Source: Oopsacas minuta (lineage: Eukaryota > Animalia > Porifera). Taken from it: a DNA stretch of 64,000 nt. The stretch is taken from assembly GCA_024704765.1 (NCBI GenBank), contig JAKMXF010000332.1, positions 132,259 through 196,258 of the forward strand, written 5' to 3'. This document shows positions 27,715 through 51,120 of this stretch, in pieces; position 1 is the stretch's first letter; every line of letters begins with the position of its first letter. The notes below the pieces were generated by a model that saw only the letters and a program-made list of their open reading frames with translations, searched no databases and was not told the origin of the DNA. A program made the position numbers and the translations under genes.

Positions 27715-29629
27715 ACAAGTATAAAATGTACAGTTCTGCTGTAGACCAGAATCACACAAACCATGGATGCATAGTACCCATGCTGGTTTCAAACACTATT
27801 ATTTTTGATAGGACACTTATATATCTCAAAAGAATGCCCCAACTTCCATCCTGTTGCATCATGCAGAATCACACTAACCGTGAACATTTCTATGACTTAT
27901 ATTCTAGTTTCACTCACTACTATTTAGACAGAATGTGAATACTCAGTTGGTCCAATCACCATACTGTTACGCTACGCAACCAGATGTCCTGATGCCAACC
28001 GTCAGTTAATCATCACTTTATTGTATTGACATAAATAAAGTTCTGTAGCAAAGAAATCTGAGGTGGTTGATCATTCGGACCAATATGCTCATTTTAGTCC
28101 AGAGTAATTATAGACTCAGTACTAAATAACAGGCTCGAATAATCGCTGAAAGCACATTTTCAGGACTACCATAGAACAAATTTGTTAATACTACCAGATT
28201 AACCCGATTAATCGAAAATGTATAGCAATATATATTAATCCAGTAGTGTGCGAAATTTAAATAATTGATAACAATTACTCATGGTTAGTGGGATTCTAGC
28301 ATGATGTAGCTAGTTTGCGGATTCAGTAAGAGATGGAGGTTGGACATCCCGTTGAAATATAGATATTCTCTCAAAGGACTAGTGTGGGAAACTTGCATGG
28401 GTAGTATGTATCCATCGTTTGTGTAATTCTAACATACAAGATCTTCATCATCAATATATTTTACGCAAACAAATGATGCAAATCAAAAATTTGAAAATCC
28501 ATAATCAAGCTGTGACAGCTTAGGCATATGTGTTGGTAGTACAATAATAGAACGTAACTCACACAGTTAATTTACTAGGCATCTCAATATTATTAGGCAG
28601 TCTCTACTTGAATCCCATACCATGGATGTTTAAAAGGAAATTGAGTTAGCAATGACGAAAGTCCCACATTTTTGAAAGGACTTCCTTCCATTTAAAAAAA
28701 ATTACTGAAAAAGTAAAACAGACCATAAGGAAAATAAACTAGGCCTGTACAAATGCTACCGTGAAGTGAGATTGTCATGTCAGTGTATACATTTGTCCTT
28801 GATGTCGACAAACTTAAGTGAATCTGAAATCAGTTAGTACGGGTGTTTACAGCAATAATTCGTAAAATGATGCGTAGTGTGATTTCAAATTTCGCATTCA
28901 AATCAAACAACATTTCAAGTAAACAATTGAAATTGAATAAACGCATTATGGTACCTATATCCCTATATCCAATGTATTTACAAATGAGATCAAAATAATT
29001 GATGAAATTATATTTCCATAGGTTGAACCACTGTGGCATGGATGCAATATGGCCTATGGACTCCTTAACTATAACTTCCCAATCTGAATTATCAAATTTA
29101 ATGTCCGACCCTAACCGATTGCTAAAGAGACAATGGACTTAAATTCGAAGATCCGAACCTGAGCGCCAAGGGTTCATATTTATAGGGGTAAAAGTATGAT
29201 TACTAGCTATAATAATAAGCTAAGCCAATGCGAAAATAAGGAAATAAATTATAAATATCACGGTATCAGTTGATATTCAAAAGGATCTACCTTCGTAGGA
29301 CTCAGCTGAAACAAAGGTTGAGAAGAGGGTCAAAGGAATTTCTAAGGGAGAATATAGATCCACATCCAATGCATTTTACTCAATGATATTCGGGTGTATT
29401 TCCACACAGCCCTCTTTGACCTTCAAAGAGGAAATCAAGACCGAGACACTTCACCAAGAAACATTACAAACGGCAACAACAAAATGTCAAGGGATTATTC
29501 TAAGGTATTAACCCAATTCAGCACATTAAACTTTACTCTTTAATAAATGAAATATAAATAACCACACATAAAATATACACTATCAAATTTCCCGGTAAAA
29601 GGGACAATGTCACGTATCGCGAAATAGCT

Positions 29630-30219
29630 TCACAGACCAAATTCATTCTTTAAAAGAGTGGAAATCTCCTCTTCAGCAACAAATCTAAGGTAAGTAATTT
29701 TACCCTCCGTCAGCTCAGAAAATTCAGAAGGATTATCCCTGGAATAGTCTTCCAAAATATCCTCAATTATATGCCTTTTAATGCAAACTATTTGTTTTTG
29801 ATCATTTGGATAACCATTTTTACTAATTGCACTTTGAATTCTATTTGAATTAATTAGGGAGAGAATCTCATACTTTGCAATGAGAGTGCACTCATCATGA
29901 ATAGAAGTGTTTCGGAAACTTGGTTGAGCAATGTATCTTACCTTCTTTTCTAAAAAGTTTGGATGCTTTCGCTTGTAAATTACCCTCCTTAACCCTTTAG
30001 AAGTAGGTAAATAGATTGTTTGCAATGGTTTGACAACGATACCTTCAGCTAAATTAGAACGATTGACTAATTTTGGAAGAGAAAACAAAGCTGGTATGGT
30101 GGTTTGAAAGTCCAAATCATAATTCTGAGCATGAACAAGCTTTCCACAATAAAGGGACCTACAGCAAAGAATTGTGAACCTTTGGCACAGATCAATAACT
30201 TTATCCCAGTCTAAGTAAA
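29630..30219 (-). CDS. Rnl2/RNA-editing-ligase-family ATP-dependent RNA ligase, terminal exon (195 aa, 5' part missing)
   Basis: The frame extends from the ORF track to an acceptor ttttttAG (30220-30221): YLDWDKVIDLCQRFTILCCRSLYCGKL...DFQTTIPALFSLP...NLAEGIVVKP (motif IV; T4 Rnl2 AEGYVLKP) ...RRVIYKRKHPNFLEKK (motif V; T4 RVAIKCKNSKFSEKK) ...NSNRIQSAISKNG...EDILEDYSRD (Rnl2 C-domain; T4 TLNRVNNVISKIG...QDILEETSRE). No stops. Comparison sequences are recalled. Confidence 0.85.
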
Positions 30220-33200
30220 CTAAAAAATGAAATATATAAGTAATCTATGCAAAGATATTTGAAAAAAGGATAGATACAAAAATTGAGTAATGCGGTTATA
30301 TAAATGTTTGTAGAATTAGATTATAAAGTAGTGATATCAAAATTGTCAAATATTTCATGTACGACTGATGAAGGATACTAGATAAGTTATGTAATTCAAT
30401 TTGTTCAAACATACAACAAACTTCAAATTTAGCCTCAAATTTGGAATAATTCAACATCTAAATAGGAAATTTCAAGAGCTAGCTCCAGTAAAATGAATTT
30501 GTCGACACTCTCCCTTTATCGCATAATTCTTCAAAACTATGGTGATGCAAAATAGAGCCCAAATTCGCTCAAAGGCCAATTTTATCTCCTGACTTAAGAT
30601 ATCAAGTGTGAACCCTATAAGTGAGGATTACCTTAAGTTTAGGGATGTATATCCATCTCCACGAATGGTAACAGAGACTATCGAGAGTTCACATTGGAAA
30701 GTTACATACTACCTGCTGCATTCTCTTTTCCTAGCTCTCGTGACTCCTGACTGTTTCCTAAACTTTAAGGAAATCCAAATTTCAAGCGATGAGAGTAAAA
30801 TCAGTGGTTTGTGATAGATTAGCACCCCAGAGAAAAGTGCAAATGAATGCAAAAATGTACATGTGAAGTTAGTGGCTTACTGGAACATATTCAGATACAA
30901 ACTTATCTAACACCATTTGTAAACATGAAATACATCGTCCTCTACCCTTGCAAGTTTAAAATCGACTTGTAGAAGGCCCGGAAGGATTATTGATAATGGA
31001 TGTCATGGATTTGAATAACATAAATCTATTAATCACTAGATTTTCGATGTATTTAGATCTACAATATAAAAAGTCCATGGATTTGGGATTAATTTGGGGC
31101 TCTGACACTAGCTAGGGATGCGGATGTTCTAATACTTATTGATTCCTCACCCATATTTACATTTTGAATGCTCGAAATCGAGGTATCATTGAGAGCATGG
31201 TCAAGGCTGGATATGAAGTAATGGGGGCCTGTTGTATGACAAATTTACTACCATGACAGTTTTACTACCTAACCACTGTCCTTAGTTCAGTTTAACTGAT
31301 ATTAGCTAGAAACTTGTGGAAACTTCGTATGGACCATACTTATGACATTCTAATTTCAAATTCTTGTGAGTTGTTTGGCTATTCACCATACGCGTCCGCT
31401 CACCGTGTAGAGAGGTTATTTGCTGAAACACATCCTGCCAAATGGACACCTTGGAATTAGGACATCTTGCCGAAAGGATATCTTGCAGAAACTAAATGTA
31501 ATTTTATTATTTCTCAGATATTTCAATAATAATCTAGTAAGTAGAGTATCAAGCAAAGATTCAATGAATCTTAGCCCTGGGTATTGTCTTTTTGGCCAAC
31601 CCTTGGTTGTTGCGAGGTGTACTTTGAACGGTTATTCCAAGTAGTGGAAGGGTTTTCACCTAATAGTATATAAACAAGCGTTAAATGTTGTATTTATGTT
31701 TATACGATATTCGCTCTTATGAGAACTCATAAAGCTAGAGCATAATTAGAATATTACAGATTTTGTCGATTCATGTAAAAGCTCCATTTCTAAATTGGCT
31801 GAGTTTCTCATTACTGCCAGAATTCTTTTAGGAACATGACAAACACCTGGATGTCGCAGCAACTTCGCCATATAGTATAATGCTTAATGGACAGGGTGTT
31901 TCACTGATGCTGCCATCAAATAGATTGATAATACTCCGAAAATGGTTGACTATTCATTTATCTTCCGTTAATGATGTTGTTTAGCACTTATTGTCATTTC
32001 GATAAAACTGCTTATCATATTAGTTTTTCATAAATGAAAAGGTTTTCCTATCCTATGTGGCAATAACCATCAAATTATCCCAATCACAGGTAGAATGTAT
32101 GCAATTTAGTTTCGTGCACGATTAATGAAACAGCATGCACATAATAACACAGAACATTTAAAGTTTGAAGTTGTATGACGGGGAAAGTGTCAAGACACTT
32201 TCTAAAAGCAAGTATTGAAAGGAATATCCAGTACCTAAGGTTTTTAGAAAATTTTAGGATAGACATAGAAATTCGAGCTAAAGGATACAAGGATTTTTCC
32301 ATTCGGCGCCAGAGGAGCAGGCTCTTAGATAGAAATTACGTTTAAGAGTATGCGTATATTGCGTTCCTAAATGTATATAAATAGATAATCTCCTATATAC
32401 TAATCCTATACAGGTATCCCTCGCCGTTCGAGGTAGTTAAGTTCCGTTAACGACAAATTCGCGAACGGCGAGAAATAGCTTAATGAGAATAGTGACCTTA
32501 CGTTCACAGATTTCAGGAGCTGAGGTGAATTTCCTAAGGGTCTACTAACAGAATTGTTTCGAATTAGCTGGGTGCTTGTTTCTTGGAGCCAAATCCATAT
32601 GCTTATTGATACGTAACATAAGGTGAATCAATGAAACAAGAACTATGTCCGGTCATCTTTACATGCAGGGAAAGTAGGCATGTCCAGAATTGATTGAAGA
32701 AACTGGAAAGCCCATGTGCTGATTTTTGGCATACTAGGGTATTTTGGGACTCGCTTGGGCAGGTTCGAGTCTTGGACAAAAATTCACGGCCAATAACGAA
32801 ATAGTGACATCATGTCACCTCTAGGATTCAGAAATCATAATATTAACCACTCCTTAGCCAATATACATGATACAAGTTTGATATTAGAATCACAGGTTTT
32901 TCTCAATGTGACAAAGTTCTGATTTCATGATTTTTCCATAAATGCAAAATCATCATGGGATTAGTGAGTCATCATGACTGTTTATAATCAAATTTCCCCA
33001 AATTTAGAAATTTTTTGAGAATTTCATATATTTTAGACAAGAAGTTCCCAGATTACGAACCAAAGGCAGCTAAGAGATGCACTATTAACATTGCATGCCA
33101 TTAAATGGAGCATGGTGGGACCAAGGAAATATATAGCGTAAATTTCGGCAAAAACTTTACCTCGACACAGGTAGTGCTGAGACATCCTGTCGCGTAGCGA

Positions 33201-34664
33201 TCTAAAGCATCAAGAAACCTATCTATTTGATACTCAAGCTAACCTGAGGTACTATCCTTATCGCAGCGACCTAGCAAGCAAACCGCGCTTGTACAGATAA
33301 ATTCGCTTTGAAATTAATCCATTATTTAAAAATTCATAAATATATACTATATCGGACAAAATACGTTCAACAGATTTTCGAATTCTATACACCCTCAAAT
33401 GAAATAATACTGGGCAAATGTGACAAAAATTTTAAATTCAAAAGCCAAATTCCGTTTGTTTCAGATGGGAATTTAGAATTAACAATTTATGCACTGACTT
33501 AAAGACAAATACCCGATGTGACAACATAAACTGTGGGTAAAATTACCAGATTGCAACTGTAGTTATTTAACTATATTTTTGATGAATGTATTTAATGATT
33601 GAAGGTGCACGAATATGAGTCCTCAAAATTTGCCCATTAGAAAACATTTGAAGTTAAATTTCAAAAGTCCACTATTTCGTCGGATATTTCAATCGTCTAC
33701 ATACGTCTGAAATTTTGTGGCTAGATAGCATTTTTGGTCCTAATTGGGTCCGTTTTGACACATCTAGAACGATAAATATAACAGAAAAGAAATCAGAACA
33801 ATTCCAAATAATCTAATGATTTATTACCTAAAATTCAAATTTCACCAGGTAGGCGAATTCCTGAAGTTGGTATTATCCACAAATTAGCGATCCCGATTGA
33901 AATTAATCATGATGATTATGGAGTTATAATAGATTACCCAATAATTGTGTGATCTATGTATCTAAGGTACCTGAAGAATTATCCAACTTTTGCAATGATG
34001 TACTAAACAGTCGCGCAGCTGCCCAGTAAATGAAGCTTGGCAGAGTGAAAAAATTTTCTGAGTTTTTGAATCTCTTAAAAGAATTTTGGTGAATTACGAT
34101 GGTCTTGTCAGATAATTGTTAATATTTTTAGGGAACAGGGGTAGTTAATGTAACTTGATACATTCTATCACACCCAAATCTATAAACGTTAAAGTTAATG
34201 TTCCTTATATCTCCTTGAATGCTATATTCCATTTCCAATTTCACTTCAGGTAACAGTTTGGTTACAGTTTCGAAGCTGTATATATTTCCGTATCAATCCA
34301 ATAAGCTTTCAACTAATTTCTCCAGATCTTTTACATATAATTTCAACAACATAAGATGATATTTCACAATTAGATAAGTGTTTAGTTAGAGCAGTCAGTT
34401 ACTAAAACAGAAATTCTCTGAATTCATGATGAAATCTCGAAATATTGGAGTGTCATAACAGTATTACTATAAGACCGAAGATTTGAAACTTAGATATAAT
34501 CGTTGGTATGTCCATGAGAACGACTCACAAATCAGTGATTTCACCAACATCCTCCGAAATCGGAGGATGTTGGTAAAATGACTGGTTACGTTGAACTGAA
34601 ATTGCCCCAATGATATGTTCAGATTTCATTCTTAAGGATCTGTAGTGCACCAAATGCATAAATA

Positions 34665-35960
34665 CCGAGTGTTCAATAAGTTCTCGGAAAAGATGTTTCC
34701 ACGGCAGTGAACTAACAAGTTACTATAATGAATGTTCAAAATATTCCACATTAGTATCAATACACCTTTGACAGCGATGTAACCACATGTTAAATAGCTT
34801 AAAATAGCTACTTACTGGTATACACTCAGCTGCCTCTAAAAACGCAGCGATTAGCTCGGATTCTGATTCAAAACGTCTGCCCTTAAGTTGTCTTTTTATA
34901 TTCGGGAACAGCCAAAAATCACAAGGGGCAAGATCTGGACTGTAAGGGTGGATGTTCAACCATTTCTAAGGCTGATTGCCTAAGAAACTCTTTGGTCCTT
35001 CTGACTCTGTGTGCTGGAGCACTATCATGATGAAATTTCATCCTACGATCCCAGACTTTGGTCTCAACGTCTCCACTGCTTCGAACACTTTAGGAAGGCA
35101 ACAATCGGTATACCAAGCTGCAGTAACTGTATGCTTCGCTTGAAGCATCACAAATTCAAGAAGTGCTCTCGTGGCGAAGAAAATTGCGAACATTCACCTG
35201 CCGACCGCCATGAATCGTTTGGGAATTGTGTCCGGTACCTCCTCTTCAAAGATCCATTTAGAGCTCTGTTGCTTCGTTTGCATGTCATAGAAGTAGACCC
35301 AAGTTTCATCACTCGTTATTACTTCTGAATGCCGCCGAGAATCTGCTTTCGAGTACTTTAGTAACATAGAGCGACAAAATTGGATACGACGATTTTTCTG
35401 CTCCAAAGTTAGCAAATGTGGGACTAACTTGGAACAAACCTTTCTTACAAGGTGTTGGTGTAGGATGTTTCTAATGTTCCCGATGATACATGCATCGTGA
35501 ACTAACTGACGGATAGTAATTTGTCTGTCCTCTCTTACCAGTTCCTCCACTTTGATGATATTTTCATCGGTGGCCACCGTAATCTGATGTCCGGTTCGAA
35601 CATCATCATCCAAGCACATGTAACCCAAACGAAATGGGCTGTACCACTTGTAAATGCTTGTTTTGGTTGGAGACTGTTCTTCAAAAACAGAAAACATGTC
35701 AGTGATCACTCCATAGTGTTTGTTCCACGTTTATAGTTGTAAAATATTATTGCTCGGAAATCCCTATTATTCAAATTCTCCATTGAAAATTCAAAATTTG
35801 AAAATGACTTGACTAAATTGAGTGTAACAGAAAAAGTAAACTACTTAGAATGTTGAAATTTATCTACTATTCACTCGCTAGCTATACTACTTATAGTTAA
35901 TTAACATTAACGCTACCAAATGAACTTTATATAGATTCCGCGAACTTATTGAACACTCGG
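34665..35960 (-). mobile_element. mariner element, 1296 bp, defective transposase ~34723-35783
   Basis: TIRs ccgagtgttcaataagttc(t/g)cggaa with TA flanks. Motifs ITSDETWVYFYD and HPYSPDLAPCDFWLFP. Confidence 0.94.
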
Positions 35961-36970
35961 TATTTCAATTAATTGATATGCTACGCCTGCTGGTTGTTTT
36001 GAAGTTAACAAAAGTAAATCACAATACATAGTCAGGAGGTCTTGATGAGCAGGATCCATAATTGGTGAATACACTAAGTGAACCAGTCAATTTACAAATT
36101 GAACGAAAATTTGACGAAATATGTAAACTGATTTTACAAATTGAGTATATCGTATTTAACGAGGTCATATTGACCCCCCATATTTGGTAAAGAAATCTTA
36201 GGTATTATTGATTCATCAGAGTATATCCAAATTTTCCTGTACTAAGACGTTTTGAATATAAATGGTCAAGCTCTCACTCAAGGATTAATAAAATTCTATT
36301 GACGATAATAATTTACTTCTCAATAGTAAGAACTGTCAACTCTCCAATGTTTTGTCTAAAATTATTTAGTATTTTCATATGTAATTCATTATTGTTGAAA
36401 AGGAAATAGTATTTACGGGGTGTATAGCATAGTTCCATATTTCGAAAATTCTTGTTGTTTTCGTTTGGCAGTTATTACACCTTTTCATAAGTATATTGCA
36501 ATAAATCGTTGTCCCTGGTCTAAAATTTCAAAAGCCTCATTGCTTTAGTATATAGAATGCTATAGATAAGCCAAATGTGTCGATAGACTCCAAATGTACA
36601 TGTTCCCTTCAAAAGATTACGTTTTGGCGTTCGAACTTAAGCAATTTCTGAATATTTAGTAATATATCACATAAATATGTAGCAAAAGGTATGATTACTG
36701 TAAAACGCTAAAAGAAGAAATTTTTAAATTTATGCCACCATGTGCAATATACTCCGCATATACAACATGCACTTTAACAATAATACACTTTATAACAAAA
36801 ACTAAACAGTTTTAGCGAGAATAATGTCACGAATTTGATGGCAGGAATTAGAGAGTTTGATTTGGGTAAAATTGTACAACAAATTGAAGACATAAGGAAG
36901 TTGATGAAAATATACAAAGATTTTTAGCTATAAAATTTGTTTAACAAGCTGTGACAACATTTTGGGAAAC

Positions 36971-37606
36971 AATGTTGATGTTGCAGTCTAAATCTGAGTT
37001 TGATGTACTCGCAATCACACTGGTGTACTCATAATCACACCAACCTATTGGTGTAAGTGCGAGCTTCGAATAGCATCAATATTGGGTAAATTTTAATTAC
37101 TGATCTCTGCTATATGGAATATAAGTAATCCTAATTAGAGATAATTAGGGTTAGGTACTAACAATAAACTAGCAATCACCCTACGCATAATACTATGCAT
37201 AATGGAACTACAAAAAATTCTAAAGTGATTCGATTGAGGTTAAGGATGATTCTTATCTAGATTCAGTCCCTGGGTTAAACATCTTGAAGCTTTAAATATA
37301 ATTATTTCCCAAAGATTATTCGCAGAATTGAGTATTTATACTTGGATATATCAAAAAGTCATCTATGTACCAAATTAGAAATGGGGAAATACTCATCAAC
37401 ACATGCGTAAACTGTGTTTGATAAACATCAAACTAGCCAAATCAATGATGTCATCTACAGTGACTTTCATTCCATAAAATGAGTTACGGAAAACAGTGAA
37501 TACGCAATATACCTATAATGATTCTATTTAAAGCTCGCACCTACACCAATAGGTTGGCGTGATTGCAATCACACCAAACTCGCATTTACACTGCAACATT
37601 GACATT
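36971..37606. mobile_element. ~640-bp foldback MITE with ~110-bp TIRs
   Basis: aatgttgatgttgcagtctaaat...ccaacctattggtgtaagtgcgagct (36971-37070) is the reverse complement of ~37530-37606. The left arm carries a ~20-bp internal duplication. Confidence 0.7.
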
Positions 37607-38141
37607 CTTGTGGAATAGAATATTTCAATGTGCAACGAAATTTCAGAAGAGAATTCGGATTCTGAACAATCTTTCATATATAATTATGTGGTGGTAATCT
37701 ACATGAACCAAGAAGGAACACATACTAATCTATGAATTATGATTTTTTCCAGTTTAGCGTTCAGAATTATTAAAACCATAGCAAACTAAAGATAAGTCCT
37801 GATCACTGAGTCAATGTTTACTTGATCAGGGATAAAATGAAATAGATATATTTAGATAGGAAATTCTATAATCGTCGATAATGTGTAACTGGGACACTTT
37901 CACCCAAACAAAAATATTATGATATGAAAGAAGTCACAAAAGCCACATTTGTGAGGAATTGCTGATAGAGAGTCATCACTACTAGTGTAGCTGACAAATA
38001 TGTAATACAAATGTTCCATCTTGGATAATGTTGAAAGTTAATTAAATATTTATGTTCAAAATATTGAAATACCAAATGATCTAAAACTGTTTCTATAAAT
38101 ATACAAAAATTCTCATTATAAAGATAGCATTTTTGAATGTA

Positions 38142-39447
38142 AAAGGTGGCACATAAGTTCTGTCAAAGGTAAATTTTCTATATGATTTCTAATAAGCACA
38201 GTATCATTCTAATACTTTTCAAGTGAATACAAATACATTCATTGTGAATATTATCAATTATATTTCAATATCGCCACCTTTTGCTTTGATAACAGCGTGC
38301 AGTCTCTTAGGAAAAGCATCAACAGCGGAACGTAGGGTTTCTTGAGGTATCCTATCCCATTCTCGACACACTGCGGTTTTCAATGACTCTACATTAGTGT
38401 GAGACTTTGAACAAGTATTTGTTTCCAAGATTAACCAGATGGAATAGTCCATTGGGTTAAAATCAGGACTGTAAGGTGGCCATTCCTCCTTCCGAATAAA
38501 ATTGGGAGTATTGCTCCGAAAGCATGCGTGTGTGGCATTAGAAGTATGAACTGGAGCACCGTCCTGTTGAAACACAAAAGGTTTTCCAGAAAACATCGTA
38601 CGGCTCAGTTCTTTTACAACAGGCGATAATATAAGCTCTCGGTAGGTCTGAGTATTGATTTTGACTCCTACGAGTACAAAGATGAGTGGTGTCCAGCTAA
38701 TTGCAGAAATTCCCTCCCATACCATCACTGAGAGAGCTTTTTGATCCGGCTAACGTATCGAAGTTCTTCAGGAATGTTTTCAAGTGAGGATGAGATGATA
38801 CGATCGTTTTGCGGGTTATGTATTTCCTCTATGGTGAATAATTTCTCATCAGTAAATACAAAAGATTCAAGACCATGGATTGCGTGCCAGTATAGGAGTC
38901 CCTTGCTCCTCGTGATTCATTTTCTCTTTACTAAGTCCGAGAGATGGTGCACTCTCTTTCGCTGGAAAGAATGTATCTCTAAGCCTCTTTTAACAACTCG
39001 TCCGATAGATCTACGAGAGATCCTAAGTTCAGAGGCCATTTCCCTCATTGAACGGCAGGGATTCCTGTGTATCCGTTCCCTCAATACCTTTTTAAGCCTT
39101 TGTGTGGTAACAGAGCGTGGAAGACCAGACCTACGTTTGTCATTTCTCCCTCCAGTATCTGTATATGGCTTAATAGTTCTATATATCAACTTCCTCCTAC
39201 TATTGGGAAATTTTAGTAGTTTGTCTATTTCTGATGGACTTTTCCCTTCCTCAAATAATAGAATAATTCTTGATCGATCCTGGTCCATTACAATATTGTC
39301 AAGATTATTGAAACAGAAGAAATAGGACTTTATTACAACACCCTAAACATATAACACAATGTAGATAAGGGACAAATAAGACTTGAATGTTGGCGGAAAT
39401 ATTTGTGGTAACTTATATTATTGTGGCAGAACTTATGACCCACCCTG
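38142..39447 (-). mobile_element. maT/DD37D element (1306 bp), defective transposase 38258-39288
   Basis: TIR cagggtgggtcataagttctg (the other end is degenerate) with TA flanks. FQQD-(37)-D in WPPYSPDFNPMD. The core appears identical to 47101-48402. Confidence 0.95.
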
Positions 39448-40878
39448 TATACTATAGAATATAGATCTTGATTACTACCAAAATTTCCACGATTATCGAG
39501 CTATATGAAGATTTTGACAAAATGCATGCAATATATCATCTGTGCGATAACTCACAAATGTTGGAACTTTATCATGAAACCATTTTTTGCGTGAAAATGT
39601 ACCAATTTCATATAATTGCTGATGGAAGATTTTCCATCCAAATTTATCCACTTCCGTTTATCCCTAGACACAAGCAGTGATGAATGGTCATCTTTAGTAG
39701 GCTATGCTCAAATATACACTATTTAACCCATGAATTCTTGTATAATTAAAAACTCAACTACAAATGAAAGATCTAAGAATGTGGATCTACAATTCCAGGC
39801 AATATATTTGGTAACTATGGCTCTAACTCGTATACATGTTATCATTCGTACTACAACTACAAGTACAAATTAGATTCGAAGTTGTCCAGGCCAGGCCCAA
39901 AGTACTACTGCATGCTAAAAGAATCCCATGGAGGACTCTATTTTCTTCAATATATTAAGGATATACAAACATATATACATACACTAAGTGGATAAAAGTG
40001 TCTGAAATTATAGAGGATATACTATACTATACTAATATATGGTAGGAATGTTCAATTCAGAGATTATGTAATATTCACTAAAACTACATGTTATGAAGTC
40101 AAATAGCTTAGTTATTCTCAATTCTAATATTTTGTAGTATGAACTTTCATCTTTTGACTTCCTTTAGTCTTTTGGGAAGACTTTCGATCAACCTGTCTAT
40201 TTGTTGGACGCTTATCGTGCCCATTCTTCTATTATGGAATTGCATAACTCTGCTAGGTTTCTCGGTTCCAGTTGCTTCTTTCGGACGTTTATCATCAATA
40301 AATCCCAAACATTCTCGATGGGATGTATATCGCGGGATTGAGGCGATTAGGTTAACAGAGGAATCCTTTTCTTACCAAACCAGCTTATTGTATTTTCGCT
40401 TTGTGTAAGGAGCATTGTCTTGCATAAATGTTCTGTGTTTCCTCTTGAATATCTTTCAATTTGGGAGAAAACGATCTAAAAGATTGGAATTATACTCATT
40501 AGAATTCATTGTAGTTGCAATTTCAATTAGGGGACCGATTTTCCTGTAAGCTATACATCCTCAAAACATGGCGGACCCCCTCCAACTTCAATAATCTGTT
40601 TTGTACATTCAGGCCGGTAACACTCTGTGGCATTCATCCAAACTTTTACTCTCCCATCTGAGTTGATTAAGTTAAACATCGACCCAGGAAAATGATTCGC
40701 TTTCAAAAGATTATACCCCAAATTTGTGACTAAAAGCAAAATATAACCTTTTCCGTTGATTAACTTTGGAGATCCACGGTTTCTTGCACAAGCGGCGAGC
40801 ATAGAATCTAAGATGATGCAGGCTGAGAGATAAGGTCTTTTTGTATATTTATGGAACTTTCCTGTCGTTATATAGTTA

Positions 40879-42250
40879 CAGTGTGTTCGGAAATTATTGG
40901 GACTGATTATAAATGTATTCTACTATGAATTCATGACTCGTAGAGATTTCTCGTTTTAACACTAAGTTAAAATACATATAGTTGAAGAAAAACTAGCATT
41001 ATTATCACATTCTATCAATAATTATTTTTTTTCCCAGCATTGTCTAAACACAATCTAATTCTTTTGAGCATTGAAGTGCAAAAGGGACGGAGAAAGTCTG
41101 GATCAAATGTTGCCCATATGTCCTGAATTGCCTGTTTTAGTTGGCTTACAGTTTTAGGATGAAGTACAATCAACCTCCTTTTCAAAACTGCCCACAGATT
41201 CTCAATGGGCGCTAGGTCTGGGCTATTTGGCGGCCAATCAATTCTAAGGGGGACGAACTCCGTCTTCCACCCCTTAGCTGCTCTGCCAGTGTGCACAGGA
41301 CTGTCATCCTCCTGTAAAACCCAGCTATCTCCGTATTTTGCGTTAGCCTCCTCAATAAGACACTCGCGAAGAGTGGAAATATACACCACCTGATTAGAAT
41401 TTTCTGTGAAAATCCTCCGATGTGTAGTCCCCATTATCGAAATTCCACCCCAAAGATGAACTTTAGATGGATGCCTGAATGTTGGCAGATGAACTGTTTG
41501 TCCCTTTTTAATCCACATGTTGACTCTTCCAGAGTCAAGCCAAACTGAACATTCATCCGTAAAGAAGGTCTTGCTCCAATCAAAACACTTCATTTCTTTA
41601 CACCAGGCGATTCTTTTGGAAATATGGAGGTCGGTGAGTGCTGGAACTCGGACAGCCCGCTTGCTGACAAAGTTTTGCCTCTTTACCTGAGCATAAAGAG
41701 TACTTATGGATACAGGAGAGCTCAATCTCGGTAGTATAGAGCGTAGAGAGGTCCTCGGATTGCTTTGATACAGAGCAGCTATCCTTCTTTTGTCATTTGC
41801 CTTGATTTTTGAAGGCCGACCAGCACCCCTTTTGTGCTGAAGGCTTTTTTTATCTTTTATCTGATTCAAGACACAATATACAGTCTGCTTAGGTATACTT
41901 GTTCGCTGCCAGATATCCACTCCTTTGGTAATTCCTGCATTGTATAGTGTCTCTATTTGATTTCTGCGCTGTTGTTGGGTAGAGTGCTTGTACATTGTAC
42001 AAAATATGCGGTCTTAGATGACGGAAATGGGATCTCGAAATATATATAGGTATATTTGCTTGGAAATCACAATATTTCAGCCAAACAAACGAAATATTAG
42101 GTGAAATAGCGAATCTATTGGTTTTCTAACAATTATAGGAAGTGTATATATACAGTAAGGTAAATGGTTGTATAATATGTGCATAACCTGATATCCTTCA
42201 TGGTGATTCAAGTTAATCATGAAAAGTCCCAATAATTTCCGAACATACTG
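40879..42250 (-). mobile_element. Tc1 (DD34E) element, 1372 bp, apparently intact
   Basis: 26-bp TIRs cagt(g/a)tgttcggaaattattgggact (1 mismatch), a TA duplication and an uninterrupted transposase. Confidence 0.96.
41015..41995 (-). CDS. Tc1-family DD34E transposase, 326 aa, intact
   Basis: ATG-to-stop ORF with HTH (GAGRPSK), FFTDE, VHLWGGIS and LQED-(34 aa)-E in WPPNSPDLAPIENLW. Confidence 0.93.
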   Translation of the reverse strand: MYKHSTQQQRRNQIETLYNAGITKGVDIWQRTSIPKQTVYCVLNQIKDKKSLQHKRGAGRPSKIKANDKRRIAALYQSNPRTSLRSILPRLSSPVSISTLYAQVKRQNFVSKRAVRVPALTDLHISKRIAWCKEMKCFDWSKTFFTDECSVWLDSGRVNMWIKKGQTVHLPTFRHPSKVHLWGGISIMGTTHRRIFTENSNQVVYISTLRECLIEEANAKYGDSWVLQEDDSPVHTGRAAKGWKTEFVPLRIDWPPNSPDLAPIENLWAVLKRRLIVLHPKTVSQLKQAIQDIWATFDPDFLRPFCTSMLKRIRLCLDNAGKKNNY

Positions 42251-42808
42251 TAGGTTAAGTTCTTAAGACTTGATCAGGGAATTGATTTTACTATTGACCA
42301 CAGCTGCTCGCAACCTCTTTCTGTCTTCAATTTAGGACAGCCTGCCCTTTTTATGATTCTGGGTTGACCCTACCTTTTCCACTTACGAATTATGTAGTGC
42401 AATGATGAACCGTTTGCATAAAATCAGGGAGATTTGTGCAACTCGATAACAACCTTTATGTAACCCAAATGCTTCCGAGCGAGTTGAATTGGGAATTTCA
42501 CAAATATTAGACATTTAGGGAGATTATTTGGTGTAATCCAGGGGTGTCCAACCCGCGGCCCGCGTATGTCCTTGGTGCGCCCCGCCAGCTAACTTTGTCA
42601 TTGTGCGGTACTTTTCTGGGATAATGCATCAATGCGAATTTTGAATGCTTCTAATATAGTTGGGTTTCTGGTTTATTGTTATTAGTAAAGTCTAGTTGCG
42701 AATACCTATAATTTAACTATTTCTATGGCTAGTTATATTTGTTTTGGATCCCATACAAATCAGACTACTGTTTCAGGAGTTCTAGAATCTAGAATTTTAT
42801 TATATATA

Positions 42809-43709
42809 CAGTCAATGGACAAAAGTATTCAACCACACAAATATATTGTCATAAATTGTATACTCTTTCCCGCTCCTATATATTGTGTAGTCTATATTCG
42901 TAGCTGCAATCTAGTAATTTGCATAGAATAACGTATGTTTTCCGAGTATTTCAAAAAATATTTTCGATTTACACATTTTGAAGGTGTTAATTATTAATAA
43001 TCATTTGATAATTATTGATAATAAAATATGTGGTAATTCAAAACCTATTAAGAATCTGTAATTCTGACTTGATATTTTAATTCTACGTAGCGAGTTACCC
43101 TAGATTTAAATTTCCAATGAGATTGAACAATTTTTACCAAGGTTATAGAAGAATTTCAATTTGTGCCACTTTAGCCACTTCTTGAAAAAGTGGCACAGGC
43201 GACAGGAAAAAGCGCCACTATGAGGAAATCAACTAGGATTAGGAGGAATAAGTCAAAGTAATATTTTCGAATGATATGACTATGCTAACCCTTGAATTAC
43301 AAAACAACCTCTGGGTAACGACCACTTGTGCCACCTTGGGCAAAAGGTGGCACAAATTGAAATCTTCTATAACTTTGGTAAAAATTGTTCAATCTCATTG
43401 GAAATTTAAATCTAGGGTAATTCGCCTACGTAGAATTCAAATATCAGGTCAGAAATTACAGATTCTTAATAGGTTTTGAATTACCACACAATTTGGTTAT
43501 CAATAATTATCAAATAATTATTAATAATTAACACCTTCAAAAAGTGTAAATCGAGAATATTTTTTGAAATTCTCGAAAAACATATGTTATTCTATGCAAA
43601 TTACTAGATTGCAGCTACGAATATAGACTACACAATATATAGGAGCGGGAAAGTGTATACAATTTGTGACAATATATTTGTGTGGTCGAATACTTTTGTC
43701 CCCTAACTG
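42809..43709. mobile_element. ~900-bp Tc1-ended MITE/foldback with ~350-bp TIRs, copy 1
   Basis: cagtcaatggacaaaagtattc / gaatacttttgtcccctaactg with TA flanks. Long inverted arms and no ORF of substance. Second copy at 48528-49442. Confidence 0.9.
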
Positions 43710-43715
43710 TATGTA

Positions 43716-45044
43716 CTACGGCTGTTCAATAAGTTCTGATCACTAACACCAAAGTACCCAAAAGTATGTTGTACTCAAACAATCAGTGTTTAATTATTTC
43801 GAAATACTCCCACCATTATTTATACAGCGTTGAAGACACTCCAACCATTGTACAAAATATTTTTATAGTCTTCCGGCGGTATCCGTTTGAGATACTGGAA
43901 AATCGCCGATCCCAGTTCTATGCTGTTGCTAAAATGACGACCAGAGAGGTATTCCTTAAGCTTAGGGAAGAGATAGAAATCGCAAGGAGCTAGATCTGGG
44001 CTGTAGGGTGGGTGTTCAAGCTCAGTTATCCCCATCCTTAAGATTTTTTCTTTGACTTGCTTGGTTTTGTGAGGACGGGCATTATCATGTAATAATCTCA
44101 ACCCTTTAGCACCAGTCCTTTTTCTCCTCTTCGACAAGTTTTCTCCCACTGCACCAAGACAATTACTAGTGTAGAAGCTTCCAGTAACAGTTTGTCCCTT
44201 TGGAATTATCACCTGGGCCACTGGGCCATGTACATCAAAAATATGCAATACATGATCCTCGATGATCTGAAATCTAGACGCGGTATCATCGGGGGTCCGA
44301 GTGCTTTCTTATCCGCACCTTATTTGCCTGTTTGGAAAAGGTGTGTTATACTGAACCCATGTCTCATTACCAGTCACTATCTCAAATAATCTTCGCGGGT
44401 CGCATTCTTTGTAGGATTTAAGGAGATTACGACAACATCCCACCCTTGTCTCTTTCTGGGCCTTTGTGAGTAAATGTGGAGCCCATCTGGCACAAACCTT
44501 CGTCAACTTGAGCTGTGATCTTAAAATGTGGTCTACACTTCCCATCGAGATGCCAACACTTTTAGAAAGTTCCCTGATAGTTATATGTGAGTCTAGGTCT
44601 ATCAGTTTCTTGATAGCGCACGATTTAATGGGAGATGCAACCATAATTGGTGCTCCAGGCTGAGGATCATCTTCGATAGACTTTCTTCCCAGCCTGAAAC
44701 GCTGAGCCCATCTTCTGACTCCTGCATAAGACAGAGCACCTTTCGTAGTATAGACTTGAACCAAATCAAGATGTATCTCGTGTGCAGATTTCCCGAGCAG
44801 AGTACGAATCTTGACATAAGCTCTTTGCTCGATTTTAGAATGCTTGCCAATGTCATAAAGGTATAGTATAAAAAACATCTGTTGTAAAATTTGATGTAAC
44901 TTGTTGAGTTTTTAAGCGATAATGAAAAATCAATACTAGCTCGTCGACAGAGGATTAAGTATTCACATTCAAATATCAATATATTATTGTTGTGTTATAA
45001 ATCCCCACAGTAATACAGTGATCAGAATTTATTGAACGCCCTAG
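43716..45044 (-). mobile_element. mariner (DD34D) element, 1329 bp, frameshifted transposase ~43820-44878
   Basis: TIRs cta(c/g)ggc(t)gttcaataa(g/a)ttctgatcact with TA flanks. Motifs WAPHLL, VTGNETW (first D mutated to N) and LHD-(34)-D in HPPYSPDLAPCD. Confidence 0.94.
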
Positions 45045-45119
45045 TATATGCCACTATCTTTACACAATCACTTTTCAAACTGATATAGTATTATAATACA
45101 CGTCTAAGATACCTTCGCC

Positions 45120-46910
45120 ATGGCATCCATTTCTAACAAGATAAGGAAAGTAGAAGATGAATTAAGGGTTTTTCAAACTAGATGGACTGAAAGTTATTCC
45201 TTTATTGAATTTAACAACATACCTATTTGTCTCATATGTAATGAATCTATATCTGTTCTAAAGGAATTTAATGTTAAACGCCATTATGAAACTATTCAGG
45301 GAAAGGAATATATCACCATACAAGGAGAATTTCGGAAAGATAAAATATTACACTTAAGAAGAATCTAACCAAATACCATCAAATCTTTGAGAATTTAGGG
45401 GACTAATCTGAATCTTCTGTCAAAGTTAGCTATAAAGTTGCGGAAATAATTGCAAAGAAGTCCATACCATTTTCAGATGGAGAGTTTATTAAAGAGTGTT
45501 TGAGAAGTGTTGCTGAAATAACATGCCCAGACAAAACAGATGAGATTTCAAAGATAAGTCTATCTCATCAGACAATAGCAAGACGTATAGTTGATTTGTC
45601 TTGCTCAATTGAAAACAAGTTGATCTTACGAGCTTCAAATTTCAGGTTTTATTCATTGACACTTGACGAAAGTACAAATGCTGCGGATACTGCTCAAGTA
45701 GCTATTTTATACGAAGTCTCGAAGACGATTTCAACATTACCGAAGAAATGGGCGCTTTAGTCTCATTAAAGGATGCCACGAAAACGAATGATATTTATAA
45801 GGCAGTTACGACTACACTGGCAAGATTTGCTTTAGATTTCGGTGAAATTTCGGAAATAACGACGCATGAAGCTCCAGCAATGGTAGGTAAAAGGGAAGGC
45901 CTCATGAAGTTAATTGAAAACGTAGCGCTGCAGTCAGGTAATACTAATTTAATGAAATACCACTGCATTGTTCATCAAGAGAACCTATGTGCCAAATCTC
46001 TTAAAATTGAAAGCGTAATGAAAGTTGTTATCAGAACAGTTAACTTCATTCGCTCCAGTGGACTTAATCATAGACAGTTTCAAGAATTGCTGAGTGATTT
46101 ACATTCAGAATTCGGTGACATTATTTACTATGCTGAAGTTGGATAATTGAGCCGTGGTAAAATGTTAAAACGATTGTTTGATTTGGAAGATGAAATTCAG
46201 ATGTTCACGCAACGAAAAGGGCAACCAATTCCTGAATTCCAAGTCGACGAATGGTTACGTGATTTTGCTTGTTAATAGATATTAGTTCTCACTTGAATGA
46301 ATTAAAACAAGACTTCAAGGAACAGACCAACTAATCCCTGCGATGTTTGATCATATCAATGCTTTTCAAATTAAGCTTAGTTTATGGGAATCTCAACTCA
46401 GAGTAAAGAATTATGTTCATTTTCCAACCATAAGAATGCACAAAGTGAATGATCCTGAAAGATCGCCAAGTAAATTTCGTCTTTAAGAGAAGAATTCAAT
46501 GATAGATTCCAGGATTTCAGAAAATACAGTCCCTATTTGAGTCTATTTTCATCTCCATTCAAAGTAAATATAGATTCCGTGACAGAAAATCTACAAGTGG
46601 AGTCATTGATATGCAATGCGATTCTCTTCTAAAGGATAAATTTGGTCAAGTGGGTTTACTCGACTAAATACATCGTATGTATCTAAGGAAAAATATCCTA
46701 GAATACACAATCATTCACTTTTAATGAGCTCTCTTTCGGAAGCACATATATATATGAGAGCAAGTGTTTTCCAGGATGAAAAATATCAAATGTAATAGCA
46801 GGACTCGTATCACAGACAACAACCTTGAATCTTCCATCAGAGTTGCAAGTTCTGCGATCTCTCCTAATATAGAATTTCCTGTTGCAGCTAAAAATAGCCA
46901 AATCTCCCAT
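45120..46910 (+). pseudogene. SPIN/GTF2IRD2-like hAT transposase pseudogene
   Basis: RVFQTRWTESYSF...CLICNESISVLKEFNVKRHYET; SLSHQTIARR; YSLTLDESTN; YHCIVHQENLCAK; LNHRQFQELL. Many frameshifts. The 3' end is approximate. Confidence 0.9.
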
Positions 46911-47100
46911 TAATTTCTAGCCTCATTATCATAAATCATAATCTTAATAAATTATCCTAAACAATAGAAATAATTTAAGAATACGGTGCGGCCGACGTCA
47001 AAATTCATGTACAAGCTGTGGCCCTTTGCAAAAATAGGTTGAATATCCCTGGTCTAATCTTTGTGATAATATAATCAATAAACTCAGGAATTATTGAATA

Positions 47101-48402
47101 CAGGGGGGCATAAGTTCTGCCACAATAATATAAGTTACCACAAATATTTCCGCCAACATTCAAGTCTTATTTGTCCCTTATCTACATTGTGTTATATGTT
47201 TAGGGTGTTGTAATAAAGTCCTATTTCTTCTGTTTCAATAATCTTGACAATATTGTAATGGACCAGGATCGATCAAGAATTATTCTATTATTTGAGGAAG
47301 GGAAAAGTCCATCAGAAATAGACAAACTACTAAAATTTCCCAATAGTAGGAGGAAGTTGATATATAGAACTATTAAGCCATATACAGATACTGGAGGGAG
47401 AAATGACAAACGTAGGTCTGGTCTTCCACGCTCTGTTACCACACAAAGGCTTAAAAAGGTATTGAGGGAACGGATACACAGGAATCCCTGCCGTTCAATG
47501 AGGGAAATGGCCTCTGAACTTAGGATCTCTCGTAGATCTATCGGACGAGTTGTTAAAAGAGGCTTAGAGATACATTCTTTCCAGCGAAAGAGAGTGCACC
47601 ATCTCTCGGACTTAGTAAAGAGAAAATGAATCACGAGGAGCAAGGGACTCCTATACTGGCACGCAATCCATGGTCTTGAATCTTTTGTATTTACTGATGA
47701 GAAATTATTCACCATAGAGGAAATACATAACCCGCAAAACGATCGTATCATCTCATCCTCACTTGAAAACATTCCTGAAGAACTTCGATACGTTAGCCGG
47801 ATCAAAAAGCTCTCTCAGTGATGGTATGGGAGGGAATTTCTGCAATTAGCTGGACACCACTCATCTTTGTACTCGTAGGAGTCAAAATCAATACTCAGAC
47901 CTACCGAGAGCTTATATTATCGCCTGTTGTAAAAGAACTGAGCCGTACGATGTTTTCTGGAAAACCTTTTGTGTTTCAACAGGACGGTGCTCCAGTTCAT
48001 ACTTCTAATGCCACACACGCATGCTTTCGGAGCAATACTCCCAATTTTATTCGGAAGGAGGAATGGCCACCTTACAGTCCTGATTTTAACCCAATGGACT
48101 ATTCCATCTGGTTAATCTTGGAAACAAATACTTGTTCAAAGTCTCACACTAATGTAGAGTCATTGAAAACCGCAGTGTGTCGAGAATGGGATAGGATACC
48201 TCAAGAAACCCTACGTTCCGCTGTTGATGCTTTTCCTAAGAGACTGCACGCTGTTATCAAAGCAAAAGGTGGCGATATTGAAATATAATTGATAATATTC
48301 ACAATGAATGTATTTGTATTCACTTGAAAAGTATTAGAATGATACTGTGCTTATTAGAAATCATAAAGAAATTTAACCTTGTATCAGCTTTGCCCCACCC
48401 TG
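47101..48402 (+). mobile_element. maT/DD37D element (1302 bp), defective transposase 47258-48288
   Basis: Inverted twin of 38142-39447 with identical ORF translations. TA flanks. Tips diverged. Confidence 0.95.
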
Positions 48403-48527
48403 TATACAATCAGTAATAGAAATATCAAGATACAGCGAATTCTATGCACATATATTGTGGTTGAAATATCGGCATTAAAAGAAAGGGAATATTTCAAATA
48501 ATTTTATCCACTTGGTGTATGTATATA

Positions 48528-49442: not shown

Positions 49443-49579
49443 TATATATACATAAATTTGTTGTTTTCTCACGCATTGGTTTCTTTCAAAATTCGAATAG
49501 TCTGAAAGTTGTTCATGTATTCCTTTAGATATATCATGCGTTGTTCGAATATTACACAAATATGTCTGCGTGTATTCTA

Positions 49580-50886: not shown

Positions 50887-51120
50887 TAAGTGCTAAGAGT
50901 AAATACCCGAATGAATATTTATCAACCAAAATTCAAATTTATGTCATTATATTAGTGACAGGTGTTTCGATTTAAATGTTATATTAGATCCCAAAGTGTT
51001 TCAGTTGGAAATATTTACTCGTAATATTTGAAAATCATTGTAGAGAACCGGATGCGTATGGTAATTTTAGGAGAAACAAGTATATATGTAAGGAAACGCA
51101 ACGAAATACTGCCCATTCTA

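What the first reader, a model, noticed from the sequence alone, without database searches (positions are those of the whole stretch)
29630..30219. Spliced Rnl2/RNA-editing-ligase-type RNA ligase in an animal-like genome
Seen: an intact 195-codon exon behind a clean ttttttAG acceptor, with nucleotidyltransferase motif IV (EGIVVKP), motif V (KRK...FLEKK) and the Rnl2-specific C-domain (NRIQSAISKNG...DILED). Established: Rnl2 ligases (T4 Rnl2, trypanosome REL1/REL2) seal 3'-OH/5'-P RNA nicks in phage RNA repair and U-insertion/deletion editing, and are a different family from animal RtcB and RLIG1/C12orf29. Inference: an intron-containing, lesion-free copy amid decayed transposons suggests a selected, little-studied RNA repair or organellar RNA-processing function, possibly from old horizontal transfer. 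Motifs I (KxxG), Ia, III and IIIa should lie on upstream exons (>30221) that I could not place. REL-like annotations do exist in some invertebrate genomes, so novelty may lie in function rather than presence.
Basis: partly seen in the sequence, partly recalled or inferred. Interest (0 to 1): 0.8.

Follow-up and report, generated by a model that had tools for sequence, protein, structure and literature searches.

The report
Spliced Rnl2-type RNA ligase gene, glass sponge
The exon is the real, transcribed last exon of an intron-containing RNA-joining enzyme gene of the phage T4 Rnl2 / trypanosome editing-ligase family, in a glass-sponge genome. Databases already label such genes in other sponges and a cnidarian, but I found no paper that studies one in any animal.

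Summary
Minus strand 30219..29630 is a 195-codon open exon behind an AG acceptor. It carries ligase motifs IV and V and the Rnl2-specific C-terminal domain (PF18043 above Pfam's cut-off; TIGR02307 E 2e-16; best predicted-fold match T4 Rnl2, Z 10.1).

I found the preceding exon 27.4 kb upstream (57804..57673, motif IIIa FDIA). Its splice phases fit the last exon. One public run (X4) behaves like RNA: it covers the exon and 3' UTR heavily and the intron hardly at all. One of its contigs runs from 30219 straight into the end of that upstream exon, so the splice is seen directly.

Four other, unidentified species (contigs from public metagenome assemblies) have the same exon boundaries and intact frames, with synonymous sites saturated. 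This points to long-term purifying selection.

The exons for motifs I, Ia and III, including the catalytic lysine, are not in the window.

The genome is Oopsacas minuta or a close relative. RefSeq already names relatives "RNA-editing ligase, mitochondrial-like" in Amphimedon and Hydractinia. This is a new member of a known, biochemically unstudied animal group. Horizontal transfer is neither shown nor excluded.

The parts
29630..30219 (-). Last coding exon: 2 bases of a split codon, 195 codons and a TGA stop. It encodes the C-terminal third of the nucleotidyltransferase domain (motifs IV and V) and the Rnl2-type helical C-terminal domain.
   Evidence: Predicted fold has mean pLDDT 91.5; its best PDB match is T4 Rnl2 2hvr_B, Z 10.1 over 165 residues. 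Run X4 has exact-match contigs at word depth about 1400-1640.
29195..29629 (-). Probable 3' untranslated region. Its far end is approximate.
   Evidence: An X4 contig covers 29195-29694 at depth 243, and X4 depth is essentially zero (0-1.3) below about 29090. I saw no canonical AATAAA near the end.
30220..57672 (-). Intron of 27,453 bases (GT at 57672-57671, AG at 30221-30220), filled with transposon remains.
   Evidence: The boundaries follow from the two exons. The junction 57673^30219 is read in an X4 contig. Tc1/mariner and other transposase ORFs lie inside.
57673..57804 (-). Penultimate coding exon, 132 bases: 2 bases of a split Gly codon, 43 codons (window:57674-57802:-) and 1 base. It encodes the subfamily-specific 'YxHPxV...PIQ' insert and motif IIIa (FDIA). 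Across the junction to the last exon, G+TT gives Val.
   Evidence: A profile built locally from 99 full-length relatives scores it E 1.2e-9 at profile positions 133-173, directly before the last exon at 177-365. BLASTP to transcript-derived P0006 gives E 7e-9. An exon of the same length and phases is at L005:5243-5374. The 18 loose letters of the X4 contig match 57675-57692 uniquely.
30632..30967 (-). Minor alternative or cryptic upstream exon, spliced to the same acceptor at 30219 (donor AAG|GTAAT). It shows no ligase similarity.
   Evidence: One X4 contig at depth 8.8 shows a joint 30219^30632 with canonical ends, against about 1400-1640 on the main exon. Sequence.
57805..64000 (-). Upstream intron sequence. 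No exon for motifs I, Ia or III was found before the window ends.
   Evidence: No hit from the motif regex, from tblastn with phage Rnl2 proteins, or from the family profile run without speed filters.

Best explanation
These are the last two coding exons of a genuine, transcribed, spliceosomally spliced nuclear gene of a glass sponge (Oopsacas minuta or a close relative). The gene encodes an Rnl2-family ATP-dependent RNA ligase.

Inferred mechanism, by homology with T4 Rnl2 and trypanosome REL1:
1. A motif I lysine, on an exon outside this window, takes AMP from ATP.
2. The AMP is passed to a 5'-phosphate RNA end.
3. The 3'-OH attacks and seals a nick in duplex RNA.

In this scheme the residues of motifs IIIa, IV and V encoded here contact the nucleotide, and the helical C-terminal domain encoded here holds the nicked duplex for the sealing step.

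Shown here: family membership of the encoded part, the exon structure, the splice, transcription, and conservation.

Inferred: the complete reading frame, catalytic activity, and the cellular role. I take that role to be most likely cytoplasmic or nuclear RNA repair rather than mitochondrial editing.
For: Family:
- PF18043 is above its cut-off and TIGR02307 gives E 2e-16.
- Phage rnlB matches at 28-31% identity.
- A profile of animal-type relatives hits TbREL1 (1xdn) at E 6e-43 and T4 Rnl2 (2hvq) at E 5e-27 over its full length.
- The predicted fold matches T4 Rnl2 residues 132-331 at Z 10.1, with the next match at 7.0.
- Columns invariant across 40 relatives are kept in this exon: the motif IV E-G (the Glu in at least 90% of rows), the motif V K82 and K84, R78, R126, S132 and G135.

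Gene structure:
- The penultimate exon has matching phases.
- The acceptor position and phase are the same in L001, L005 and L007, and L005 has the same 132-base exon.

Expression:
- Run X4 covers the exon and 3' UTR at word depth 240-2100 and the flanking intron at 0-9.
- One of its contigs continues from 30219 into 18 bases that occur once in the window, at the end of the upstream exon.

Selection:
- In every comparison with the four orthologous exons, the proportion of synonymous differences (pS) is 0.69-0.84 and of non-synonymous differences (pN) 0.28-0.41. All five frames are open at 195-197 codons.
- The window's exon scores as high on the family profile (181 bits) as its orthologues (165-183).

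Host:
- It lies on the same contig as a PCM1 exon that is 96% identical to O. minuta PCM1.
Against: - No exon with the motif I lysine, motif Ia or motif III was found in the 6.2 kb that remain upstream in the window. A full catalytic protein is therefore not demonstrated.
- The RNA evidence comes from assembled contigs of a single run whose library type is not on record, from the same sample as the DNA runs.
- X4 contigs break between 29694 and 29709. The 3' part is about six times shallower than the rest of the exon, which I cannot explain.
- No ligase of this animal group has been assayed in any paper I could find.
Confidence: 0.8

Rival explanations
1. A transcribed but truncated or non-catalytic remnant. 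The two exons are spliced and expressed, but the 5' exons with motifs I and III are lost or decayed. The product would then be only an RNA-binding or regulatory fragment, or a non-coding transcript.
For: No motif I or III exon is in the window. In the related loci no upstream exon was found within 5-10 kb either, so completeness is unproven in every genomic copy I could read.
Against: - Long introns explain the absence: 27.4 kb here and more than 10 kb in L001 and L007.
- Motifs IIIa, IV and V, whose only known role is in catalysis, are conserved across five diverged species under purifying selection.
- Full-length transcript-derived relatives (P0006, P0031) carry all motifs.
That length modulo 3 equals 1, which would fit the phase needed by the exon at 57804.
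Confidence: 0.12
2. A mitochondrial RNA-editing ligase like kinetoplastid REL1/REL2, as the RefSeq names of relatives suggest. It would seal mRNA after U insertion or deletion.
For: The nucleotidyltransferase domain of the animal-type family is closer to TbREL1 (E 6e-43) than to T4 Rnl2 (E 5e-27). RefSeq calls the Amphimedon and Hydractinia relatives 'RNA-editing ligase, mitochondrial-like'.
Against: - Those names are automatic transfers by similarity.
- The C-terminal domain here is of the T4 Rnl2 type.
- The N-termini of full-length relatives (P0006, P0011, P0186) are acidic and do not look like mitochondrial presequences. This is by eye only.
- The same subfamily is common in cyanobacteria, Bacteroidota and amoebae, which have no editosome.
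Confidence: 0.05
3. Foreign DNA: a bacterial or phage contaminant, a recent insertion, or a gene carried by a transposon.
For: The nearest characterised relatives are phage and protist enzymes. The gene sits among transposon remains.
Against: - It has two canonical GT-AG introns, one of 27.4 kb.
- The splice is seen in RNA.
- Intron positions are shared with four other species.
- G+C is the same as the surroundings.
- DNA runs X1-X3 cover exon and flanks evenly, and one 7.1-kb X2 contig spans the whole stretch that was laid.
- An animal PCM1 exon lies on the same contig.
- In the tree the clade lies outside the bacterial group.
Confidence: 0.02

Closest known systems
Bacteriophage T4 RNA ligase 2 (Rnl2, gp24.1; PDB 2hvq/2hvr) and the rnlB genes of Vibrio phages such as KVP40
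   Same: It has the same two-part build: a nucleotidyltransferase domain with motifs I-V followed by the Rnl2-specific helical C-terminal domain. The exon matches PF18043 and TIGR02307. It aligns to phage rnlB from the 'YLDWD' position onward. Its predicted fold overlays T4 Rnl2 residues 132-331.
   Different: Identity is only 17-31%. The animal-type subfamily has an extra segment after motif III (GG-Y-P-H-P ... P-I/V-Q), encoded here by the exon at 57804..57673. Pfam and NCBIfam do not recognise that segment on its own. The gene is nuclear and split by long introns.
Kinetoplastid RNA-editing ligases REL1/REL2 (TbREL1, PDB 1xdn)
   Same: This is the closest solved nucleotidyltransferase domain. 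The exon alone gives E 0.013, and a profile of animal-type relatives gives E 6e-43. The model overlays it with rmsd 2.6 A over 86 residues at 28% identity.
   Different: The C-terminal half of the exon matches the T4 Rnl2 C-domain model (PF18043). The solved REL1 chain covers only the catalytic domain, so the C-terminal parts could not be compared. There is no evidence here of an editosome, of mitochondrial targeting or of U-insertion/deletion editing.
Database-annotated animal relatives: Amphimedon queenslandica 'RNA-editing ligase 2, mitochondrial-like' (P0186), Hydractinia symbiolongicarpus XP_057316468 'RNA-editing ligase 1, mitochondrial-like' (P0136) and Ephydatia muelleri Em0015g76a (P0038)
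   Same: They belong to the same subfamily clade with the post-motif-III insert (support 100/100). They are non-bilaterian animal genes with the same invariant residues.
   Different: Identity to the window's exon is only about 30-36%. The window groups in its own well-supported clade (97/95) with five exon-only ORFs from public metagenome assemblies whose organisms I did not identify. Branching among the animal groups is unresolved. No protein of O. minuta containing this exon turned up in the protein collections.
Bacterial and protist 'Rnl2 family RNA ligase' proteins (cyanobacteria, Bacteroidota, Asgard archaea, Arcella, Willaertia, Paratrimastix)
   Same: They have the same length, the same motifs and the same insert, at 30-38% identity to the exon.
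   Different: They are intronless or of unknown gene structure. In the tree they form a separate group of 17 rows (93/98) that does not contain the sponge clade.

Membership tests
Rnl2-family RNA ligase (T4 Rnl2-like; TIGR02307 / PF09414 + PF18043) | Motif I lysine (KxxG; K-I/V-H-G-x-N in this subfamily) that becomes adenylylated | tested here: inconclusive
It is not found in any frame of the window. The exon that should carry it lies beyond the window's end.
Rnl2-family RNA ligase (T4 Rnl2-like; TIGR02307 / PF09414 + PF18043) | Motifs Ia and III (GELFGG in this subfamily) | tested here: inconclusive
   They are not in the window. The exon at 57804 begins with the last two bases of the Gly codon that ends motif III, so the motif must be on the preceding exon.
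Rnl2-family RNA ligase (T4 Rnl2-like; TIGR02307 / PF09414 + PF18043) | Motif IIIa (aromatic residue followed by Asp: F-D-I-A) | tested here: met
   It is present in the exon 57804..57673 and aligns to the invariant Asp of the family.
Rnl2-family RNA ligase (T4 Rnl2-like; TIGR02307 / PF09414 + PF18043) | Motif IV (E-G-x-V-x-K) and motif V (K-x-K) | tested here: met
   AEGIVVKP and KRK are present. G59, K82 and K84 fall in columns invariant across 40 relatives, and E58 in a column conserved in at least 90% of them. They align to the same motifs of phage rnlB and TbREL1.
Rnl2-family RNA ligase (T4 Rnl2-like; TIGR02307 / PF09414 + PF18043) | Rnl2-specific all-helical C-terminal domain | tested here: met
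   PF18043 scores 36.5 bits against a cut-off of 27. Residues 109-193 are predicted as five helices (H109-121, H124-134, H140-161, H163-167, H171-193) at pLDDT above 90. The whole model aligns to T4 Rnl2 132-331 at Z 10.1.
Rnl2-family RNA ligase (T4 Rnl2-like; TIGR02307 / PF09414 + PF18043) | Whole-protein score above the TIGR02307 equivalog cut-off (197 bits) | tested here: inconclusive
   The last exon alone scores 60 bits over profile positions 134-296. The full protein could not be scored, because the 5' exons are missing and joined exons were not to be searched.
Rnl2-family RNA ligase (T4 Rnl2-like; TIGR02307 / PF09414 + PF18043) | ATP-dependent sealing of 3'-OH/5'-PO4 nicks in duplex RNA | not testable with these tools
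   This needs a biochemical assay.
Kinetoplastid editosome ligases REL1/REL2 | Mitochondrial targeting and assembly into an editosome through the C-terminal interaction region | not testable with these tools
   The N-terminus is outside the window. The C-terminal half matches the T4 Rnl2 C-domain model. The solved REL1 chain lacks its C-terminal region, so no comparison was possible.
Kinetoplastid editosome ligases REL1/REL2 | REL1-like nucleotidyltransferase domain | tested here: met
   The exon against 1xdn gives E 0.013. A profile of animal-type relatives gives E 6e-43. The structural overlay has rmsd 2.6 A over 86 residues.

The most novel reading that the evidence does not exclude
Sponges and cnidarians keep an ancient Rnl2/REL-type nick-sealing RNA ligase that bilaterians lost, and it does work that is not yet described in animals. 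That work could be repair of RNA cut by ribotoxins or anticodon nucleases of microbes, as has been proposed for the horizontally acquired RNA ligases of bdelloid rotifers (PMC11258130). It could also be a step in organellar RNA processing. The very high read depth on this exon in the one RNA-like run would fit an actively used enzyme.
Probability: 0.12. Interest if true: 0.65.

Novelty: new member of a known kind. Interest (0 to 1): 0.38.

Why it matters
Animals are usually described as joining RNA with RtcB, and recently RLIG1. Rnl2-type ligases are described as 'scarce and scattered' (PMC4599027) and are known functionally only from phage T4 and kinetoplastid editing.

This locus shows that a glass sponge has such a gene. 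It is split by a 27-kb intron, spliced, transcribed and under purifying selection, with the same exon structure in four other species.

It also appears to be missing from the public protein sets of the (near-)same species, probably because of the long intron.

It offers a concrete candidate for the first biochemical test of an animal Rnl2-type ligase. It also bears on whether early animals inherited or acquired an RNA-repair enzyme that bilaterians lack. The gain is modest, because automatic annotations of relatives already exist.

Tried and rejected
Searches for the 5' exons that found nothing:
- A regex for motif I (K.[HDN]G.N) in all six frames of the window.
- Looser regexes for motifs I and III in 57805-64000. 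These gave only a transposase zinc-finger-like 'WFGEFSWL'.
- tblastn with two full-length phage Rnl2 proteins. This found only the known exon.

Other approaches that gave little:
- Pfam and NCBIfam on the 43-codon exon alone gave no hit. It was recognised only by a profile built from 99 full-length subfamily members, and by BLASTP to P0006.
- Translated comparison of the window with L001 showed only the last exon conserved.
- The flanks of L001, L007 and L008 (5.8-10 kb upstream) hold no further ligase exon. L005 and L006 hold only the penultimate one.
- Foldseek gave only a weak E-value (0.024) for T4 Rnl2, because the model is half a domain plus a second domain. The VIA-align re-alignment settled it.

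Literature: searches for Rnl2 or RNA-editing ligase together with sponges, cnidarians or metazoa found no study of an animal enzyme. Burroughs & Aravind 2016 is not held in the library.

Rejected readings: contamination and transposon cargo, for the reasons given under the rival explanations.

Horizontal transfer: the tree leaves the animal groups, Paratrimastix and the bacterial group in an unresolved polytomy, so no donor or direction can be named.

Only the single junction codon (G+TT, Val) was computed.

Full report
OBSERVATION. On the minus strand, a T-rich tract and an AG (30221-30220) precede an exon that starts at 30219 with two bases of a split codon. It runs through 195 sense codons to a TGA at 29632..29630. 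The quoted motifs EGIVVKP, KRK...FLEKK and NRIQSAISKNG...DILED are all there.

FAMILY. Several independent comparisons agree.
- Pfam T4_Rnl2_C scores 36.5 bits (cut-off 27, E 6e-9). The last third of the Pfam RNA_ligase profile matches at E 0.004.
- NCBIfam TIGR02307 'RNA ligase, Rnl2 family' matches profile positions 134-296 of 326 at E 2.3e-16.
- tblastn against phage genomes finds annotated rnlB (RNA ligase 2) genes of Vibrio phages, at 28-31% identity over 86% of the exon. The alignment starts exactly at the exon's first residues, YLDWD.
- The only solved structure hit by sequence is TbREL1 (E 0.013).
- The exhaustive HMMER search gives 904 relatives at E <= 0.001.
- A model of the exon built with 40 aligned relatives has mean pLDDT 91.5: a beta-rich part followed by five helices. 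Its best PDB match is T4 Rnl2 bound to a nicked duplex (2hvr_B). Z is 10.1 over 165 residues, model 1-195 onto chain 132-331, and the next match scores 7.0. The high rmsd reflects the hinge between the two parts. TbREL1 overlays residues 1-90 at 2.6 A.
- Columns invariant across the 40 relatives are kept in this exon: the motif IV Gly and the two motif V lysines, with the motif IV Glu in a column conserved in at least 90% of rows.

THE REST OF THE GENE. I built a profile from 99 full-length relatives and ran it, without speed filters, on every stop-free segment of the window. It found one more piece at 57620-57838 on the minus strand: E 1.2e-9 at profile positions 133-173, directly ahead of the last exon at 177-365.
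- Read with its splice signals, this is a 132-base exon, 57804..57673. It has an acceptor ...ttgctttag|GC and a donor G|gtttgt. It consists of two bases of a split Gly codon, 43 codons including motif IIIa (FDIA), and one base.
- That last G plus the TT that opens the last exon makes Val, so the phases fit. The intron between them is 27,453 bases and is full of Tc1/mariner and other transposon remains.
- Pfam and NCBIfam do not see this short exon on its own. BLASTP to the transcript-derived relative P0006 does (E 7e-9).
- No exon for motifs I, Ia or III lies in the 6.2 kb that remain upstream in the window.
- An earlier first-reader note of this scan (s1-285016) reports an intron-containing Rnl2 piece of 343 bases, 21,387 bases beyond the window's end. 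I could not read it. 343 is 114 codons plus one base, which would fit the phase that the exon at 57804 needs, and about 114 residues is roughly what is missing. This is a lead, not evidence.

TRANSCRIPTION AND SPLICING. Four public runs from one sample hold the stretch, and none is on record as RNA. I laid them on 27800-33300.
- X1-X3 cover everything evenly, as DNA does. One 7.1-kb X2 contig spans the whole stretch.
- X4 has essentially no depth (0-1.3) up to about 29090, 243 on 29195-29694, about 1400-1640 on exact-match contigs across 29709-30188, and 0-9 in the intron.
- One X4 contig runs past the exon boundary into 18 letters that lie nowhere in the laid stretch. Those letters occur once in the window, at 57675-57692 on the plus strand, which is the end of the upstream exon. 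The two bases before them (CT) are shared by both sides, so the joint is 57673^30219, exactly as predicted.
- A rare second joint (depth 8.8) links 30219 to a cryptic exon ending at 30632.
- Caveats: these are assembled contigs of a single run of unrecorded type. The contigs break at 29694-29709, and the 3' part is about six times shallower. I cannot explain either.

CONSERVATION. The nearest relatives are ORFs called on large contigs of public metagenome assemblies. P0001 and P0002 are 51-53% identical to the exon, and P0003, P0004 and P0005 are 39-43% identical. I did not identify their organisms. They look eukaryotic, because they carry spliceosomal introns and eukaryotic-type transposase ORFs.
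- Each ORF starts at the same place as this exon. In L001, L005 and L007 an AG acceptor sits at the same position and phase.
- L005 has the same 132-base penultimate exon, with the same phases, 4.6 kb upstream.
- All five last exons are open for 195-197 codons.
- Against the window, the proportion of synonymous differences is 0.69-0.84 (saturated) and of non-synonymous differences 0.28-0.41. The closest pair, L001 and L008, gives dN/dS 0.22.
- The window's exon scores as high on the family profile as its orthologues.
This is the pattern of a gene held by selection, not of a decaying fragment.

HOST AND RELATIVES.
- An exon at 1848-2597 (+) matches Pfam PCM1_C and is 96% identical to PCM1 of Oopsacas minuta. 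This agrees with earlier follow-up notes that call this genome a glass sponge.
- Named relatives include Amphimedon queenslandica 'RNA-editing ligase 2, mitochondrial-like', Hydractinia symbiolongicarpus 'RNA-editing ligase 1, mitochondrial-like' and Ephydatia muelleri gene models. They also include many cyanobacteria and Bacteroidota, an Asgard archaeon, and the protists Arcella, Flabellula, Willaertia and Paratrimastix.
- In a careful tree of the region that the exon covers, the window sits in a well-supported clade of the six intron-bearing exons (97/95). That clade lies inside a 100/100 clade of the subfamily with the post-motif-III insert.
- Within this larger clade, the sponge and cnidarian groups, Paratrimastix and a bacterial-archaeal-protist group form an unresolved polytomy. 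The sponge clade is not nested among bacteria. The data do not say whether the animal genes are one lineage, so horizontal transfer is neither supported nor excluded.
- A profile of animal-type full-length relatives hits TbREL1 at E 6e-43 (catalytic domain) and T4 Rnl2 at E 5e-27 along the whole length.
- No O. minuta protein containing this exon appeared in the protein searches. The gene seems to be unannotated there, plausibly because of the long intron.

MECHANISM. By homology (established for T4 Rnl2 and REL1; cited from my own knowledge of that literature), the enzyme should work in three steps. It adenylylates a motif I lysine with ATP, transfers the AMP to a 5'-phosphate end, and seals a 3'-OH/5'-PO4 nick in duplex RNA. 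The C-terminal domain would be needed for the sealing step. The parts encoded here (motifs IIIa, IV and V and the C-terminal domain) are intact. The lysine is unseen.
- A mitochondrial editing role is unlikely. The RefSeq names are automatic, and the N-termini of full-length relatives are acidic (judged by eye). The subfamily is also common in organisms without editing.
- RNA repair, perhaps against RNA-cutting toxins as proposed for the rotifers' acquired RNA ligases (PMC11258130), is my preferred reading, but it is only inferred.

LITERATURE. In the library searched I found no paper that describes or assays an animal Rnl2-type ligase. [quoted passage not shown]

LIMITS. 

VERDICT. This is a real, spliced, expressed and conserved Rnl2-family ligase gene of a glass sponge. 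Its 5' exons lie outside the window. It is a new member of a group that is annotated but unstudied in animals.

Noticed in passing
window 38166-39441 and 47105-48380: A 1,276-base perfect (100%) inverted repeat with 7.7 kb between its arms, inside the ligase intron. Each arm carries the same set of ORFs in mirror order. The enclosed stretch holds an intact-looking 326-aa Tc1/mariner transposase (41015-41995, minus strand; HTH plus DDE_3). It could be a recent inverted duplication, a composite element or an assembly artefact.
   Followed up: partly
window 1848-2597 (+): An exon matching the C-terminal region of pericentriolar material 1 (PCM1_C, E 1e-11). It is 96% identical to the Oopsacas minuta PCM1 protein, which identifies the host as that glass sponge or a close relative. 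There is a single N at 2558.
   Followed up: partly
window 30632-30967 (-): A low-level alternative or cryptic exon with a good donor (AAG|GTAAT), spliced to the ligase acceptor at 30219. It is seen in one RNA-like contig at depth 8.8 and has no ligase similarity.
   Followed up: partly
window 29694-29750: X4 contigs break between 29694 and 29709, and the 3' piece is about six times shallower. A GGTAAA sits at 29704-29699 on the minus strand. A DNA contig of X3 matches only from 29750 onward, preceded by 122 unlike letters that are absent from the window. Possible explanations are a second copy, a haplotype variant or alternative 3' processing. Unresolved.
   Followed up: partly
window 25589-26716 (-): A 375-aa ORF with a DUF4371 match, just downstream of the ligase gene on the same strand. 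DUF4371 is, to my knowledge, typical of hAT/ZMYM-type transposase-derived proteins.
   Followed up: no
window 31229-31270 and 32678-32708: Short segments with 7- to 65-fold excess depth in all four runs and many loose ends. They look like edges of high-copy repeats inside the intron.
   Followed up: no
If true, the sponge has at least two paralogues, one of them beside another RNA-end-processing gene.
   Followed up: no
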